A DNA stretch of 64,000 nucleotides, taken from the NCBI RefSeq assembly GCF_001194135.2, contig NC_068998.1, positions 49,549,373 through 49,613,372 on the forward strand, given 5' to 3'. Under the pieces are notes generated by a model. That model was not told the origin of the DNA and ran no database searches. It saw only the letters and a program-made list of their open reading frames with translations. Each line of letters opens with the position of its first letter. Position 1 is the stretch's first letter. Positions 642-60,227 of the stretch are shown here, in pieces. Both the position numbers and the translations under genes were made by a program. This stretch comes from Octopus bimaculoides. Taxonomy: Eukaryota.

Positions 642-678
642 CAACGAATAGGAGACAGAATGCAAGCAAACATTTCAT
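642..678 (-). CDS. P1 exon 1 (signal peptide) of the six-Cys tandem family; rest of gene lies left of the window
   Basis: ATG at 678-676 reads MKCLLAFCLLFV+G, 37 nt, phase 1, donor G|GTAAGTAATT; same length and phase as E1 of P2-P7. Confidence 0.85.
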
Positions 679-2069
679 CGTATATATTCACGTAACAGGC
701 AACAACTGGTAGCTTAAGGGTTGCAGGTGGCTCAACTGTTGTCTGGGTTTGAAAGCTTAATATGCTGCAAAATGTGTTTCTCATGACCATAAACGTGCAG
801 GTGCGTGCGGATCTATCTATCTATCTATCTATCTATCTATCTATCTATCTATCTATCTATCTATCTATCTATCTATCTATCTATCTATCTGTCTAGTTAT
901 CTATCTATCTATCTATCTATCTATCTATCTATCTATCTATCTATCTATCTATCTATCTATCTATCTATCTATCTATCTATCTATCTATCTCTCTCTCTTT
1001 CTCTCTGACTATCTATCTCTCATGTAGTAGCATTTTTTCTGGTTTAGAAGTCATAAAGTAGATTTAATAATTTGTTTGACAAGTTGATTTCCTAGTAAAT
1101 TTTGGTTTCCACTTTTAGAGATATAAATGTAATTTGTGGTGAACAATTTTGTCATATTTCATTTCTCCTTAACAAGCATGTAATTAATATATATTTTATA
1201 TATATATATATATATATATATNNNNNNNNNNNNNNNNNNNNNNNNNNNNNNNNNNNNNNNNNNNNNNNNNNNNNNNNNNNNNNNNNNNNNNNNNNNNNNN
1301 NNNNNNNNNNNNNNNNNNNNNNNNNNNNNNNNNNNNNNNNNNNNNNNNNNNNNNNNNNNNNNNNNNNNNNNNNNNNNNNNNNNNNNNNNNNNNNNNNNNN
1401 NNNNNNNNNNNNNNNNNNNNNNNNNNNNNNNNNNNNNNNNNNNNNNNNNNNNNNNNNNNNNNNNNNNNNNNNNNNNNNATATATATATATATATATATAT
1501 ATATATATATAATTGAAAAAGTCTGCCAACGGCCCTTCAGCAGAAACGCACCTTGATAGACTAAGTGGCTACTAATAACTTCATGCCACGACAGAGAGAT
1601 AGGATGCTCTTGAAGCCCAGATTTTGACCTTACGGTGAGAATATTTACATATCGTCTGAGGGATCAACTAGATCTCAATGCAGGAAGACATTTGCATACT
1701 TAAGTGCCTGCACGCCTGGAGAACTACGTTGCGTAGAAAAAATTGTAGCGATTGAAAATAAATGTTCAAATGAATGTACTCCTTCTTCTTGAATTCAATA
1801 TTTTCAATTATCTCTTCACACACGACAGAAGCCCAAAAGCAAACCTGCAATTACGTATAACATTACTACTTGATAGCACAGTGTGAAATCTGAAGGTTGA
1901 CGTGGTTTATACTGTACGGTAACGCACACATATATAGATGTGTTTGATGTGAGTAATTACTAAATAATAATTCTGTGCATTTGAAGTAGGAGCTGACTTA
2001 ATTCGATAAATTTCGACAAAAATTATCAAGACTACTACCGTGCAGAATAACTAGATTAAAACATTCAAA

Positions 2070-2263
2070 CTAGAAAGAATCGCTGAGATTTATTGTATCT
2101 GAAATTAATTTCTCAATGGCATCTAAACACCGATGCATTTTCCATTCTGCTACTTGACCAAAGGTACACAATACGACACACATGACTTTAGCTGCATAAC
2201 ACTTTATTTCGTTCTTTATTTTTCTATTCCTGTTCCAGGACTCAGTGTAGAGATTTAACCAAC
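2070..2263 (-). other. P2 terminal exon E5 (3'UTR; open for 63 codons in the E4-skipping frame)
   Basis: Acceptor ttttctctttacag|GTTGG at 2264/2263; aligns by eye with P3 E5 at 9732 (shared TGGAAAATGCATCGGT). True 3' end not defined. Confidence 0.65.
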
Positions 2264-56609: not shown

Positions 56610-59600
56610 TCACACCAAGGTAGATATAATAGGTATCATGAATATGATGTGAGGTTTCATAATGCCAGGCAGGCTAGCGGTCGAATTTGCTACGTTAAGA
56701 AAATAGAAAAACAATTATATTTTAATGCTCATCAAGCATTTCGATTTCAATGCAATTTTAACTTCATGTCAACAAGATTAATATATAAATGCTGATTTAT
56801 TCTTTGCATGGTTAAATTCATAACAGTATATTTAAAGTTTACGAACTGATTTTTTATTCACCATTAAGGGTTACAGAAAGAGCGAACAGACAAGGGGATG
56901 CACATAAAACGATAACCGAGGTTAAAAATTTAAAATATAAAATATAATAGATGACAATCCTGAAATGAGAGACGGGTGTAACCCCACAAACAACGTTCAA
57001 TCAGTGAACCCTTTATGATCATTTTCTTCTCCCTTAAGCAGACACATACACTCAACATGCTTGCCAATTTCTTTCATCTTTTCTCATATACCCTGAGTGG
57101 TAAGTATCTCTCCTCCAGCCTTATTTTCCTTTTAAGGCGGAAAATTTAAAAAATTAACCAAACCAAGGCTGGAGATCTCTGTCACTACTCCTTCCATGGG
57201 TGTTCTCCACACAACCTCTTTTTCCACAGCCACTACAGACAGAAAACACACCTTCCCTTGCCTGTTCAGAGGGGGCGGTGGAACAATCTTTATTATTGTT
57301 TAGGAAGGCAGTTATACAATTCCCAAACGTGACAGTAGTTCTTCGACAGAAACTCACAATTCCGAAATACTGTTCCCACCGCATCTTAGCGAGTTTATCT
57401 CGAACTGGTAAGGCTCCTCGGTAACATTGCCAAACCAGGGAGCTTTGAAAGTCATCCAAAGGTCCCAGGAATAAAGCACTGAAGTGCCTATGCATATACT
57501 TCATACAAAATTTCTCAACGAGAGAATATACAGAACCATAAAACAGCTGACTTCCGAAATCGCTTATAATAATTAATTCGTTTTATTGGCCACAAGGGCT
57601 AATATCAATTAAAAACATATAAGGACAAAGACAGGACGAAGGTTACAAAAGGTTTTGTCCGAAAAGGTAGGAAAGTTCGTCTAAACAGAGGAAGAAAACG
57701 GAGAAAGATATAAATAAATAGATAAATAAATAAGTAGAACTCCCAAAGGGGGGGGGCGCTTCGAAAAGGCAAAGGTTACACGTGGAAAAACCCATAAAAC
57801 CACGGGAGCCTGGTCAGAAAAAATAAGAAAGGGGTATAGAGCCCTTTCTCCTTTTACAATAATGATTTAAATTAGCTAAAATATTTCGTTTTCCAAGCAC
57901 CTAAATTTCGTTTTAATGTTAGAGGGACATCGAATCGCATTAAGAAAGTATAACTTCTTTGTCGTGTGAAATATAATTCGTTGATATTTCGTTTTTGCTT
58001 TATTTACTTTCTACTTTCAAACAATTTAAACACTGAAATAATTTTAAATAACATACCAATGCAGTTATCATGATGAAGCTTGGAGAAGTGTTTCGCACAG
58101 CCATGCTTCACTTTTCCTAAACAGGTTTCATAGTACTCCATACGGCTGCAGAGAATGAAAAAAAAAAAAAAAGAAAAATAGGGAAATATACCAGAGGAAA
58201 TACAATAATCTAGATAATAGTCATTTGCCGTCACAGACAGTACAACATGTCATGCCACTAAAATTAACAGAAATTACCACATGTTCTTGCAGGAAAAAGG
58301 TAAGTTAACTACGAATGTCTATTTTAATTTAAAGTTTAACTTAATTTTATTAATAGCAGTTTTCTCTACATATTGCATTTTTGTACATATTTTGATAATG
58401 TTTGTCAAAAAAAGAAACATTTAAAACAAGACACAAACATTCTTCTTTTGATGTATTTATCTAAAGTAAATTAAAATTTACCCAATTTTAATTAGCATTT
58501 TTGTTCTTTTTCATAAATATATACTTACTCGTGTGCTAGTTCTACACATTTAAAAAAATTTTACTGTCTTAATGTTTTGCGCTCTTGTCCCATTCTGTAT
58601 TATTTATATATATGTACTTAGCTACATAAAATGGAAGAGGAATGACACAATCGACCATTGCAGCGAGGCTTCCTTGGTTATTTGAACAGATAATGAAAAG
58701 GTGTGTGGAGAATGGAGGTCATTCCAGAAAAATTTTGATTTATATAATTATGTGATTGTGTGTTTGTGTGTGTGTGTATGTGTGTGTGTGTGTGTGTGTG
58801 TGTGTGTGTGTGTGTGTGTGTGTGTGTGTGTGTGTGTGTGTGTGTGTGTGTGTGTGTGTGTGAGAGAGAGAGAGAGAGAGAGAGAGAGAGAGAGAGAAAG
58901 AGCGAGAGAAATAGAACGAGAGAGTGTCCCCGTTTGTGAATGTGTTTGTGAGAACGTTTGCTGCCTTCAGCGCTATATCATCAGCTTCATATGGAAAAAT
59001 ATTCCATCAGCATTACCCAAATGATGATGTCATTGGCTTTAAGATACATCCAAGACTTGGACCTTGTGCTATCTGCCCACATAAATCATACCAGCTTCAC
59101 ATAATACAGCCCAATTATTTCACCTCAGTAGGACCGTTTCTTTTTACCATTACACTAAAACACACTAAAGGAGAAACAAACCCCATAAATTTCAAGAAAT
59201 CTTTGGACAATGTTTGGACAATTTCACTTCATTAACAAAAATAGAAAAATACAAGCTGTTGTAATAGAGGAGGTTGTAATAAGAAAACGCATACAAACTT
59301 GCAGTACTCATTATCGGGTTTCTTTTTAGGAAACAGATCCATAGCTTTTGGGCACACCTTCTTGCCTTCTTCGGGGCAATTTTCTTGCGCAGTGATCCCT
59401 AAAAAGTTTAGACATTTTAAAAATGTTACGTGGCACTGATAGAACATTCGGTGAAATCTTAGCAACTTAAAATTTAAGACATCTCTTACAGAGATAAAGA
59501 AACAATAAAAGTAACGAACATTGAGAGTATAAATGAAGCGGATGGGTTAATGAGTTATGTCAAAAGAAAGAGTTAAAAGGAGAAAGAGAGAAAGAGAGAT

Positions 59601-60227
59601 GTGAGAAATACTGAAGAAAAAGAGAAAGAAGAAGCAGCATGTTAAATAGATGAAAAGGGAAATGTAAATAAACAGGAGGGAGAGAGAAAGAGAGTGAGTG
59701 AGTGAGTGAGTGAGTGAGTGAGTGAATGAGAGGGGAGAGAGAGAAAGCAAGGGAGTAAGATGCAAGAAATTTGTGGACTAAGAAAAGGAGGGCGGTAAAG
59801 AGATGTAACGAAAGATATTGGTTGCAAATGTGGCGCAATGCCAGCAACAATTGGGGAGATGGTTAAGTCCATTACATGACTCCAGTACTCGACGTGTATT
59901 TGTTTTATCGACGCCAAAATGATGAAAGGAATTTTCGAACTTGATGGAATATGAATTCAGATCGTAAAAAACAGTTGAAATGCTTCGCCCGGGGCGCTAA
60001 CGTTTCTGCTTTAGAAAGAGAAATAGTAGCTAAATATAATGGGGAAGAAAAAATTAGGTAAATGGGAAGGGAAAAGCTAAGGGAAAATAAAGACATACAC
60101 AGGGAAAAGTGAGAACGCGTTATTTATGCAAAAATTCAAAACAAATGTTCTTGTCAACATGAAGAAGGCTTTCTCACAGTTACTTACCAAAAATGAAAAG
60201 AGCTAAGAAAAGAGTGATGGTTTTCAT
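56610..60227 (-). CDS. P8: GPI-anchored six-Cys-family protein, 102 aa
   Basis: Exons 60227-60188 (40 nt), 59398-59299 (100 nt; donor AA|GTTTGT), 58145-58057 (89 nt), 56689-56610 (donor after 56577). MKTITLFLALFIFGITAQENCPEEGKKVCPKAMDLFPKKKPDNEYCNRMEYYETCLGKVKHGCAKHFSKLHHDNCIANSTASLPGIMKPHIIFMIPIISTLV*. Confidence 0.9.
56852..57830 (-). mobile_element. L1/Tx1-like LINE fragments in P8 intron 3
   Basis: GPLDDFQSSLVWQCYRGALPVRDKL resembles the zf-RVT region; tail at 56852-56930; a second 3'UTR piece at 57580-57830. Confidence 0.65.
59870..60010 (-). mobile_element. Degenerate SINE family A
   Basis: ttttatcgac...gatgaaagg...gcccggggcgctaacgtttctgc. Confidence 0.65.

What the first reader, a model, noticed from the sequence alone, without database searches (positions are those of the whole stretch)
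642..60227. Hidden tandem array of at least 8 micro-exon genes encoding a divergent family of small GPI-anchored six-cysteine proteins
Seen: eight same-strand genes spaced 6-14 kb apart, invisible to the ORF track because exons are 37-113 nt. In all seven complete genes E2 is exactly 100 nt and E3 exactly 89 nt, with phases 1-2-1 and GT-AG boundaries. Products are signal peptide + C-x7-C-x2-A-x3-[YF]P-x4-D-x3-C-x-R-x6-C-x7-C-x3-[FY]-x7-C + small-residue spacer and hydrophobic C-terminus. Established: a signal peptide plus this type of C-terminus is the standard GPI-anchor layout. Inference: a lineage-expanded cell-surface ligand or recognition family. I do not recognise it as a named family and cannot check whether it has been described. 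The array runs off the left edge.
Basis: partly seen in the sequence, partly recalled or inferred. Interest (0 to 1): 0.95.

Follow-up and report, generated by a model that had tools for sequence, protein, structure and literature searches.

The report
Octopus small surface-protein gene array
The window holds a real tandem array of small four-exon octopus genes for signal-peptide-bearing, six-cysteine, three-helix proteins with GPI-anchor-like tails; public annotation already lists most as uncharacterized proteins, and the family is seen only in Octopus and faintly resembles the ligand-binding N-terminal domain of repulsive guidance molecules.

Summary
The window is Octopus bimaculoides chromosome CM046618.1. 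On its minus strand lie seven genes with E1 of 37-40 nt, E2 of exactly 100 nt, E3 of exactly 89 nt, intron phases 1-2-1 and AG/GT boundaries. An eighth E1 lies at 642-678.

Five genes (g1-g5) encode the full layout: signal peptide, six-cysteine domain, polar spacer and a short hydrophobic C-terminus. The other two deviate:
- g6 has no such tail in the sequenced DNA; an assembly gap may hide it.
- g7 lacks the YP, the D and the sixth cysteine.

No gap interrupts an exon.

The genes are not hidden. RefSeq or UniProt already models seven of them as "uncharacterized protein", and my exon choices reproduce those proteins.

The family is larger than reported. It has at least 30 loci, with members of one to nine domains built from the same two-exon phase 1-1 module, in O. 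bimaculoides, O. vulgaris and O. sinensis only.

AlphaFold gives a confident three-helix bundle. The only recurrent similarity is weak, to the RGM N-terminal domain (Pfam RGM_N, PDB RGMB), and it exceeds cysteine-fixed shuffles.

Function is inferred: a rapidly diverging, GPI-tethered binding module. It is moderately interesting and is a new variant of a known kind.

The parts
56610..60227 (-). g1 (RefSeq LOC106870879). E1 60188-60227 (40 nt), E2 59299-59398 (100), E3 58057-58145 (89), E4 56610-56689 (80, including the stop). Encodes 102 aa: signal peptide, six-Cys domain, an NST site, and the tail ...GIMKPHIIFMIPIISTLV.
   Evidence: The spliced product is identical to P0004 from its second Met onward.
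44410..49965 (-). g2. E1 49929-49965 (37 nt), E2 48003-48102, E3 46036-46124, E4 44410-44519 (110). Encodes 111 aa with the tail ...ASSNTISQNVLLILIISFLL.
   Evidence: The C-terminal 78 aa equal UniProt A0A0L8HG07 (P0005).
34109..36642 (-). g3 (LOC128249786). E1 36606-36642, E2 36157-36256, E3 35528-35616, E4 34109-34203 (95). Encodes 106 aa.
   Evidence: The product equals P0002 from its internal Met.
26154..29751 (-). g4 (LOC128249788). E1 29712-29748 (or 29751 if the upstream Met is used), E2 28446-28545, E3 27325-27413, E4 26154-26251 (98). Encodes 107-108 aa.
   Evidence: The product equals P0003.
20375..23611 (-). g5 (LOC128249789). E1 23572-23608 (or 23611), E2 22602-22701, E3 21000-21088, E4 20375-20469 (95). 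Intron 1 contains assembly gap 22955-23295.
   Evidence: The product is 100% identical to P0001. The gene call spans the gap in the public record.
9704..15685 (-). g6 (LOC128249787). E1 15625-15661 (the RefSeq start is upstream at 15685), E2 13569-13668, E3 11971-12059. RefSeq's last coding exon is 11652-11740 (isoform X1) or 9704-9732 (X2), and neither is hydrophobic. Gap 10529-11220 lies where a GPI-type last exon would be expected.
3461..6842 (-). g7 (LOC128249785). E1 6806-6842, E2 5797-5896, E3 4475-4563, E4 3461-3573 (113 nt, followed by a GT donor). A divergent copy: it lacks the YP, the D and the sixth Cys.
   Evidence: Matches P0012.
642..678 (-). g8, first exon only (MKCLLAFCLLFV, donor GTAAGT). 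The rest lies beyond a 4.1 kb assembly gap that starts at the window's left edge.
   Evidence: An 89-nt E3-like exon sits beyond the gap at L002 21828-21916.

Best explanation
**What it is.** The window is a segment of a large tandem cluster of paralogous genes found so far only in Octopus.

**Gene structure**
- Each gene has four short exons.
- E1 encodes a short signal peptide.
- E2 plus E3 (189 nt, phase 1 at both ends) encode one ~60-residue domain, C-x7-C-x16-C-x8-C-x7-C-x11-C. It folds as a three-helix bundle and very probably carries three disulfides.
- E4 encodes a polar spacer and a 9-15 residue hydrophobic end, of the kind that is exchanged for a GPI anchor in the ER.

[quoted passage not shown] Tail-less and multi-domain relatives would be secreted.

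**How the family expanded.** Because the two-exon domain module is phase-symmetric, it can duplicate in frame within a gene. This explains the relatives with 2, 3, 4 and 9 domains.

**How it evolves.** The cysteines and a few core residues (A, YP, PD, R-L, F) are fixed, and the rest changes fast. Paralogs in the window are 25-40% identical, and the one measurable neighbour pair has dN/dS of about 0.9. This is the pattern of a diversifying binding surface on a constant scaffold.

**Closest likeness.** The scaffold most resembles the N-terminal domain of repulsive guidance molecules, which is also a three-helix, three-disulfide module on a GPI-anchored protein and which binds BMP/GDF ligands.

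**Proposed function.** I infer that these proteins act as cell-surface or secreted binding modules: co-receptors, decoys or recognition tags.

**Shown versus inferred**
- Shown: gene structure, family membership, predicted fold, restriction to Octopus among annotated proteins.
- Inferred: signal-peptide cleavage, GPI anchoring, disulfide pairing, homology to RGM as opposed to likeness, and any binding partner.
For: **Gene models**
- Searches give the models.
- They reproduce independent RefSeq/UniProt proteins.

**Family**
- 35 representative proteins match at E <= 1e-3, 24 of them at E <= 1e-10.
- All 30 that I looked up come from O. bimaculoides, O. vulgaris or O. sinensis.
- 84 domain instances were detected across the family proteins.
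- The three-domain gene LOC128249887, about 270 kb away, splits every domain at the same point with the same phases.
- The right-hand neighbour LOC106870881 has the same 40/100/89/80-nt exons.

**Fold**
- The AlphaFold2 model of the g5 domain has mean pLDDT 94.9, with helices at residues 2-20 (kinked), 30-40 and 46-59.

**Likeness to RGM**
- RGM_N is the only Pfam family hit repeatedly: 22 of 49 domains at E <= 1, best 2.3e-4.
- The multi-domain relatives P0007 (37.9 bits) and P0013 (29.1 bits) exceed the 24.2-bit whole-protein cut-off.
- The four best PDB matches to the family profile are all RGMB N-terminal domain chains, best E = 0.039.
- With cysteines held fixed and other residues shuffled, RGMB scores 17.5 bits against 3.2 +/- 3.2, with 0 of 500 shuffles reaching it.
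- In the reverse test, real domains average 7.2 bits against 1.5 for shuffles, and 53% lie above the shuffles' 95th percentile.
- The RGMA-ND model has the same helix/cysteine order.

**Tails and divergence**
- GPI-type tails occur in g1-g5 and many relatives.
- g1 versus LOC106870881 gives dN 0.28, dS 0.30 and omega 0.93, with all scaffold residues kept.
Against: **RGM link is weak**
- No window protein reaches Pfam's RGM_N threshold. The best is 14.6 bits against a cut-off of 24.2.
- hhalign of the family against RGMA N-terminal domains gives only P = 0.005, probability 6.7%, over 29 columns.
- Foldseek of the model against the PDB finds nothing, and RGM is not in the list. The control shows the method has little power on this fold: true RGM hits at 56-87% identity reach only E = 1e-3 to 4e-6.
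- The C1-C2 spacing (7 versus 4) and C5-C6 spacing (11 versus 21) differ from RGM.
- The RGD/RGN loop and the alpha-3 contact residues named in PMC7354924 are not conserved.
- The shuffle tests destroy helical periodicity, so they show a likeness beyond cysteine spacing, not homology.

**Other gaps in the evidence**
- No signal-peptide or GPI predictor was run, and no RNA-seq was mapped.
- No Logan (read-assembly) protein matched the window's genes, so expression rests on the existence of RefSeq models and isoforms.
- An omega near 1 is also what neutral decay would give.
Confidence: 0.6

Rival explanations
1. The family is a genuinely new fold family of small GPI-anchored or secreted cysteine-rich proteins. 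Its likeness to RGM-ND is convergence: any short three-helix bundle pinned by cysteines at similar turns would look alike. Function would then be unconstrained by RGM biology. It could be a chemosensory or pheromone carrier, an immune recognition molecule, or a modulator of ion channels in the way Ly6/Lynx proteins are.
For: - All single-domain scores are below threshold.
- hhalign probability is 6.7%.
- There is no Foldseek match.
- Two of the five cysteine spacings differ, and the BMP-contact motifs are missing.
- No member carries the RGM_C domain.
Against: - The best hits are reciprocal: Pfam-wide it is RGM_N and PDB-wide it is RGMB.
- Scores exceed cysteine-fixed shuffles.
- Both are GPI-linked proteins with the helical domain directly after the signal peptide.
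Confidence: 0.3
2. The array is mostly decaying or non-functional DNA: young duplicates drifting neutrally, with the gene models predicted rather than expressed.
For: - Omega is about 0.93 for the only pair close enough to measure.
- g7 has lost a cysteine and two motif residues.
- g6 has no GPI-type end in the sequenced DNA.
- No transcript-derived (Logan) proteins were found.
Against: - All 7 x 2 core exons keep open frames, exact lengths and canonical splice sites, despite only 25-40% protein identity.
- The six cysteines and about ten scaffold positions are conserved across 49 domains from three species.
- AlphaFold folds the domain at pLDDT 95 from that alignment.
- RefSeq lists several isoforms for g6, g7 and LOC128249887. 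In my understanding of NCBI's pipeline, such isoforms derive from transcript alignments.
Confidence: 0.07
3. The exons belong to, or were spread by, a transposable element.
For: The copies are regularly spaced on one strand, and the region is rich in simple repeats.
Against: - The window has no transposase, reverse-transcriptase or other Pfam hit on any long ORF.
- Copies are highly diverged proteins with conserved intron positions, not near-identical DNA repeats.
- Flank conservation is limited to a short stretch of 5' UTR.
Confidence: 0.02

Closest known systems
N-terminal domain of repulsive guidance molecules (RGMA/B/C; Pfam PF06535 RGM_N; PDB 4UHY, 4UHZ, 4UI1, 6Z3J)
   Same: - It lies directly after a signal peptide on a GPI-anchored protein.
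- It is about 60-70 residues long, with three helices and six cysteines.
- It has the identical core spacing [FY]-C-x8-C-x7-C, with a conserved L-R after the third cysteine.
- It is the best and only recurrent Pfam and PDB match.
   Different: - The octopus proteins lack the whole RGM C-terminal (RGM_C, von Willebrand D-like) domain.
- C1-C2 is x7 rather than x4, and C5-C6 is x11 rather than x21, so helix 3 is shorter.
- The RGD/RGN loop and the BMP/GDF contact residues are not conserved.
- Scores for single domains are below Pfam's threshold.
- The octopus family is a large tandem expansion that includes multi-domain proteins, which I do not know of for RGMs.
GDNF/GAS1 domain of GFR-alpha receptors and GAS1 (Pfam PF02351)
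   Same: It is a helical, disulfide-rich extracellular domain on GPI-anchored co-receptors. UniProt's automatic name for one family member (A0A0L8GPX5, P0011) is "GDNF/GAS1 domain-containing protein".
   Different: The Pfam GDNF model gives no match, even at E <= 10, for that protein or for any of the 49 domains. As I recall, that domain is larger, with about ten cysteines. I could not reproduce the UniProt label.
Ly6/uPAR (three-finger) small GPI-anchored proteins
   Same: They share the overall design and genomics: signal peptide, one small disulfide-locked domain and a GPI signal, encoded by a few short exons, in tandem arrays that diversify quickly. They are a functional analogue.
   Different: It is a different fold (beta-rich three-finger with 8-10 cysteines, against an all-helical domain with six cysteines). 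There was no Pfam match.
Schistosome micro-exon genes (MEGs)
   Same: They are short symmetric exons encoding secreted, fast-evolving proteins.
   Different: MEGs are built from many exons of about 6-36 nt. Here there are four exons of 37-113 nt, and only E1 is micro-exon sized.

Membership tests
RGM N-terminal domain (Pfam PF06535) | Match to the RGM_N profile at Pfam's gathering score (24.2 bits) | tested here: not met
   The best window proteins are g1 at 14.6 bits (E = 0.039) and g3 at 12.0 bits; the others show no RGM_N hit. Only the multi-domain relatives P0007 (37.9 bits) and P0013 (29.1 bits) pass, by summing repeats.
RGM N-terminal domain (Pfam PF06535) | Bundle of three alpha-helices with six cysteines forming three disulfides (PMC7354924) | tested here: met
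   The AF2 model (pLDDT 94.9) has three helices, the first kinked, and six cysteines placed in the same helix order as in the RGMA-ND model. Disulfide pairing could not be read because no coordinates were available.
RGM N-terminal domain (Pfam PF06535) | Cysteine spacing C-x4-C ... C-x8-C-x7-C-x21-C | tested here: inconclusive
   The core C-x8-C-x7-C is identical. The first spacing (x7) and the last (x11) differ.
RGM N-terminal domain (Pfam PF06535) | Similarity beyond the cysteine framework | tested here: met
   In cysteine-fixed shuffle controls, RGMB scored 17.5 bits and 0 of 500 shuffles reached it, while for RGMA 17 of 500 did. The reverse test gave Mann-Whitney p = 1.7e-22, though the domains are not independent.
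RGM N-terminal domain (Pfam PF06535) | Structural match to solved RGM-ND | tested here: inconclusive
   Foldseek against the PDB gave no hit at E <= 1, and RGM was absent from the list. In the control, true RGM-ND hits reached only E = 4e-6 to 1.5e-3, so power is low.
Full-length RGM proteins | C-terminal RGM_C domain (PF06534) between the N-terminal domain and the GPI signal | tested here: not met
   The proteins are 102-111 aa and show no RGM_C hit. Vertebrate RGMAs carry both domains.
Full-length RGM proteins | RGD/RGN loop and alpha-3 residues that contact BMP2/GDF5 (RGMB Arg100, Leu103, His106; PMC7354924) | tested here: not met
   The profile alignment stops at the fifth cysteine. No RG[DN] follows the fifth cysteine in any window protein.
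GPI-anchored proteins | N-terminal signal peptide plus a C-terminal signal: small omega-site residues, a polar spacer and a terminal hydrophobic stretch with no cytoplasmic tail | tested here: inconclusive
   The layout is present by inspection in g1-g5 and many relatives. It is absent in the g6 models and atypical in g7. No NetGPI, PredGPI or SignalP was available.
GDNF/GAS1 domain (PF02351) | Match to the Pfam GDNF profile | tested here: not met
   There was no hit at E <= 1 for the 49 domains, nor at E <= 10 for P0011, which UniProt names this way.
Ly6/uPAR | Three-finger beta fold with 8-10 cysteines, and a Pfam UPAR_LY6 match | tested here: not met
   The model is all-helical with six cysteines, and there was no such Pfam hit.
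Micro-exon genes (schistosome type) | Most of the coding sequence in many symmetric exons of 36 nt or less | tested here: not met
   There are four exons of 37-40, 100, 89 and 80-113 nt.

The most novel reading that the evidence does not exclude
Octopuses have taken the BMP/GDF-binding three-helix module of an RGM-like co-receptor, freed it from the rest of the protein, and expanded it. The result is dozens of rapidly diversifying GPI-anchored single-domain and secreted multi-domain proteins. These would form a lineage-specific set of cell-surface co-receptors or decoys for cystine-knot growth factors, or a surface recognition code in nervous or sucker tissue.
Probability: 0.12. Interest if true: 0.75.

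Novelty: new variant of a known kind. Interest (0 to 1): 0.45.

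Why it matters
Cephalopod genomes are known for lineage-specific gene expansions, but most of the "uncharacterized" families have no structural or functional handle. This family gives one:
- a defined ~60-residue, six-cysteine helical domain;
- a phase-symmetric two-exon module that explains both the tandem arrays and the proteins with up to nine domains;
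- a GPI-type tail;
- a testable link to the ligand-binding domain of RGM co-receptors.

If expression turns out to be restricted to neurons, suckers or reproductive tissue, the family would be a candidate for octopus-specific cell-surface signalling or recognition. If not, it remains one more fast-evolving secreted family. I found no Pfam model for it and no paper describing it.

Tried and rejected
**Protein and structure searches**
- Pfam on the seven window proteins gave only sub-threshold hits.
- PDB sequence searches with the seven-sequence profile and with P0007 gave nothing.
- Foldseek of the domain model against the PDB gave nothing significant. The control with RGMA-ND shows this is uninformative for so small a helical fold.
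- hhalign against an RGMA-only alignment was weak: P = 0.005, probability 6.7%. That alignment was narrow (Neff 1.6), because the last homolog search returned only vertebrate RGMA in its listed top 120.
- I could not reproduce the GDNF/GAS1 label from UniProt.

**Missing exons**
- I searched for a GPI-type last exon for g6 in 6843-11970. Nothing convincing turned up, and the likely position is inside gap 10529-11220.
- I searched for g8's E2 left of the window. It is presumably inside the 4.1 kb gap.

**Literature**
- Searches for the family, its LOC identifiers and octopus-specific cysteine-rich or GPI families found nothing relevant.

**Other content of the window**
- Long ORFs are either N-run artefacts or lack Pfam hits.
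- Rfam found nothing.

- The look-up of encoding contigs had no record of P0012, so P0033 was used instead.

Full report
**1. Origin of the window and the assembly gaps**

The window is AT-rich (about 33% G+C) and has ten N runs. It is identical, gaps included, to Octopus bimaculoides assembly GCA_001194135.2, chromosome CM046618.1. The record coordinate equals the window coordinate plus 49,549,372. Because the public record has the same gaps, I could not test continuity across them against another assembly.

I could establish that no gap touches any exon of the models below:
- Gap 22955-23295 lies inside intron 1 of g5, so reading frame is not at issue. The resulting 871-nt apparent intron is in the range of the other first introns (about 350-1,950 nt).
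- Gap 10529-11220 lies 750-1,440 nt downstream of g6's E3. That is where the last exon sits in the other genes, 530-1,516 nt downstream.
- Gaps 1222-1478 and 2368-2785 lie downstream of g7's coding exons.
- The remaining gaps are intergenic.
- All the gaps I looked at are flanked by microsatellites.

Yes.

*Core exons*
- Extending each hit to its splice sites gives E2 = 100 nt and E3 = 89 nt in seven copies. Every exon is bounded by AG and GT.
- The seventh copy (g7) was found by profiles that did not contain it, at E = 1.8e-5 and 5e-9.
- A profile built from the wider family finds exactly these 14 exons and nothing else on either strand.

*First exons*
- First exons of 37 nt (40 nt in g1) encode M-K-x followed by nine or ten hydrophobic residues and end at a GT. 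They lie 350-1,950 nt upstream of each E2.
- An eighth first exon lies at 642-678.
- About 40 nt upstream of the ATG also aligns among all eight.

*Last exons*
- Last exons of 80-110 nt were found for g1-g5.
- A 113-nt last exon was found for g7.

*Phases and spacing*
- Intron phases are 1-2-1.
- The spacing of E1 starts is 6.1-13.3 kb.

**3. Agreement with public annotation**

- The spliced products are already in public databases: g1 is LOC106870879, g3 is LOC128249786, g4 is LOC128249788, g5 is LOC128249789, g6 is LOC128249787 (two isoforms) and g7 is LOC128249785 (two isoforms). g2 is the partial UniProt entry A0A0L8HG07.
- All are named "uncharacterized protein".
- My exon choices reproduce these proteins residue for residue. 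This is independent support for the models, and it also means the genes are not hidden from annotation.
- Only g8 has no model.

**4.

- The full motif holds for g1-g6.
- g7 reads ...CHIAMSTDNLDTVRSEYCR... and ends its E3 with ...SINY. It has therefore lost the YP, the D and the sixth cysteine.
- g6's two RefSeq endings (GCSKEYIG...VLNFQ and GQKPYNPDS) are not hydrophobic, and I found no better candidate in the sequenced DNA. Its GPI-type exon may be in the gap, or g6 may encode a secreted form.
- So there are five clean genes and two deviant ones, not seven uniform ones.
- "Micro-exon" applies only to E1.

**5. The array is larger than the window**

- To the left, a 4.1 kb gap starts at the window edge. 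Beyond it lies an 89-nt exon encoding RLKLFLICFKSGKQRCIPIMKRRYGKECAG, with AG/GT boundaries and the family's spacing R-x6-C-x7-C-x11-C. This is most likely g8's E3.
- To the right, LOC106870881 lies 3.7-6.8 kb beyond the window end on the same strand. Its exons are 40, 100, 89 and 80 nt.
- The three-domain gene LOC128249887, about 270 kb away, was located directly on the chromosome. Many other family loci are recorded on a contig of the same length (55,557,504 nt), so they probably share this chromosome: LOC128249820, 249836, 249851-853, 249859, 249865, 249882, 249883, 249895, LOC106874733, 106874740 and 106875519.

**6. The family**

- An exhaustive HMMER search of 1.84 billion representative proteins with a profile of the window's domains gave 35 hits at E <= 1e-3.
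- One hit (P0031, a 1,007-aa repeat protein) looks spurious.
- All 30 hits that I looked up come from O. bimaculoides, O. vulgaris or O. sinensis.
- Members have one, two, three, four or nine copies of the domain. P0006 (LOC128248155, on another chromosome) has nine.
- In LOC128249887 every domain is split after the residue that follows the third cysteine, with the same phases.
- E2 plus E3 is 189 nt with phase 1 at both ends. The domain cassette can therefore be duplicated or skipped in frame. The six isoforms of that gene differ by exactly such half-domain units.
- The 49-domain consensus is xxxxxCxxxAxxxCxxAxxxYPxxxPDxxYCxRLxxxxxCxxxxxxxCxxxFxxxxxxxC.
- Absence from other cephalopods is only absence from annotated protein sets. 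Small multi-exon genes are easily missed, and I could not search their genomes.

**7. Structure and nearest relatives**

*Predicted fold*
- AlphaFold2 on the 49-domain alignment gives mean pLDDT 94.9 and pTM 0.79, with a three-helix arrangement.
- Helix 1 (residues 2-20, kinked at the second cysteine) carries C1 and C2. A nine-residue loop contains YP...PD. Helix 2 (30-40) is bounded by C3 and C4. Helix 3 (46-59) is bounded by C5 and C6.

*Evidence for a link to RGM*
- Pfam gives one recurrent answer, the RGM N-terminal domain. It is sub-threshold for the window proteins and for single domains: 22 of 49 at E <= 1, best 2.3e-4, and the next most frequent family has two hits.
- It is above the whole-protein cut-off for two multi-domain relatives.
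- The family profile's best four PDB matches are all RGMB N-terminal domain chains (E = 0.039-0.28), aligned over D-x2-[FY]-C-x2-L-R-x-Y-x2-C-x7-C.
- An AlphaFold model of RGMA-ND shows the same order of helices and cysteines.

*Control for cysteine spacing*
- To see whether the likeness is only cysteine spacing, I shuffled all non-cysteine residues.
- RGMB scores 17.5 bits against the octopus profile, versus 3.2 +/- 3.2 for 500 shuffles, and none reached it. RGMA scores 10.0 bits, and 17 of 500 shuffles reached it.
- In reverse, the 49 domains average 7.2 bits against an RGM-ND profile, versus 1.5 for shuffles.

*Evidence against, or limiting, the link*
- hhalign against a narrow RGMA alignment gives only P = 0.005.
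- Foldseek finds nothing for the octopus model. Its power here is low, since true RGM hits at 56-87% identity only reach E = 1e-3 to 4e-6.
- Two cysteine spacings differ. The RGD loop and contact residues are absent. The RGM_C domain is absent.

I therefore describe the domain as RGM-ND-like and do not file it as a member. UniProt's automatic "GDNF/GAS1 domain-containing" name for one relative could not be reproduced with Pfam.

**8. Targeting signals**

- Each product starts with M-K/I-x, then 9-11 hydrophobic residues, then G-x-T/A.
- g1-g5 end with small residues (S, A, N, G), a 5-12 residue polar spacer, and 9-15 uncharged, mostly hydrophobic residues up to the stop codon.
- That stretch is too short for a transmembrane helix, and no cytoplasmic residues follow it.
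- Many relatives share this ending. The large multi-domain ones do not.
- This is the textbook GPI-signal layout, but I had no predictor, so it remains an inference.

**9. Rate of change**

- Window paralogs are 25-40% identical, which is too diverged for synonymous-rate estimates.
- For g1 and its neighbour LOC106870881 (Nei-Gojobori, 102 codons), dN = 0.28, dS = 0.30 and omega = 0.93.
- All six cysteines and the A, FP, D and R positions are unchanged between the two.
- The sample is small and the per-region values are noise.
- The overall picture is a fixed scaffold with free replacement elsewhere. That fits diversifying selection on a binding surface, but neutrality is not excluded.

**10. 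Verdict**

- The interpretation as a lineage-expanded surface family is reasonable but rests on sequence heuristics.
- The claim that the genes are hidden is wrong.
- The family has a weak, testable tie to the RGM N-terminal domain.
- I found no paper on it.
- I rate it a new variant of a known kind (small GPI-anchored, disulfide-locked binding modules; RGM-ND-like), of moderate interest.

Noticed in passing
window 47769-47889: A near-perfect tandem repeat of a G+C-rich 16-mer (AAGCACGCAAGCGCGG, 7.6 copies, 99% matches) sits inside intron 2 of g2. Its composition stands out in a region that is about 33% G+C.
   Followed up: no
window, flanks of all N runs (e.g. 1102-1529, 2242-2877, 10391-11286, 22837-23335, 25362-25899, 38545-39195): Every assembly gap I looked at is bordered by TA, CA/TG or similar microsatellites. 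The gaps are therefore probably unresolved simple repeats rather than missing unique sequence. This bears on whether g6's last exon is really inside gap 10529-11220.
   Followed up: partly
L002 16843-20947 (immediately left of window position 1): A 4.1 kb assembly gap begins exactly at the window's left edge, so the window boundary coincides with a gap boundary. g8's E2 is presumably inside it.
   Followed up: partly
L004 6136-9129 (window-equivalent about 67,700-70,700, outside the window): LOC106870881 is a ninth family gene just right of the window and the closest paralog of g1. It has identical exon sizes, and its overall dN/dS against g1 is about 0.9.
   Followed up: yes
window 3461-3573 and 2070-2258, minus strand: RefSeq gives g7 a second isoform (P0033, 147 aa). 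It skips E3, reads the 113-nt exon in another frame and continues into two further exons, yielding a protein with only half a domain. This is either a non-productive splice form or a model artefact.
   Followed up: partly
window 54119-54589 (-), 57154-57504 (-), 61038-61451 (+), 17073-17429 (+): These are the only N-free ORFs over 110 aa that lie outside the family's exons. None has a Pfam match above noise, and the one at 61038 ends in a long poly-Leu run from a CTG-type repeat. Rfam finds no RNA family anywhere in the window.
   Followed up: yes
P0006/P0037 and P0045 (LOC128248155 and LOC106874482, on the 117 Mb chromosome): On another chromosome, O. bimaculoides has proteins made of six to nine consecutive copies of the same domain with no GPI-type tail. 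The module therefore exists in both a tethered single-copy form and a secreted beads-on-a-string form.
   Followed up: partly
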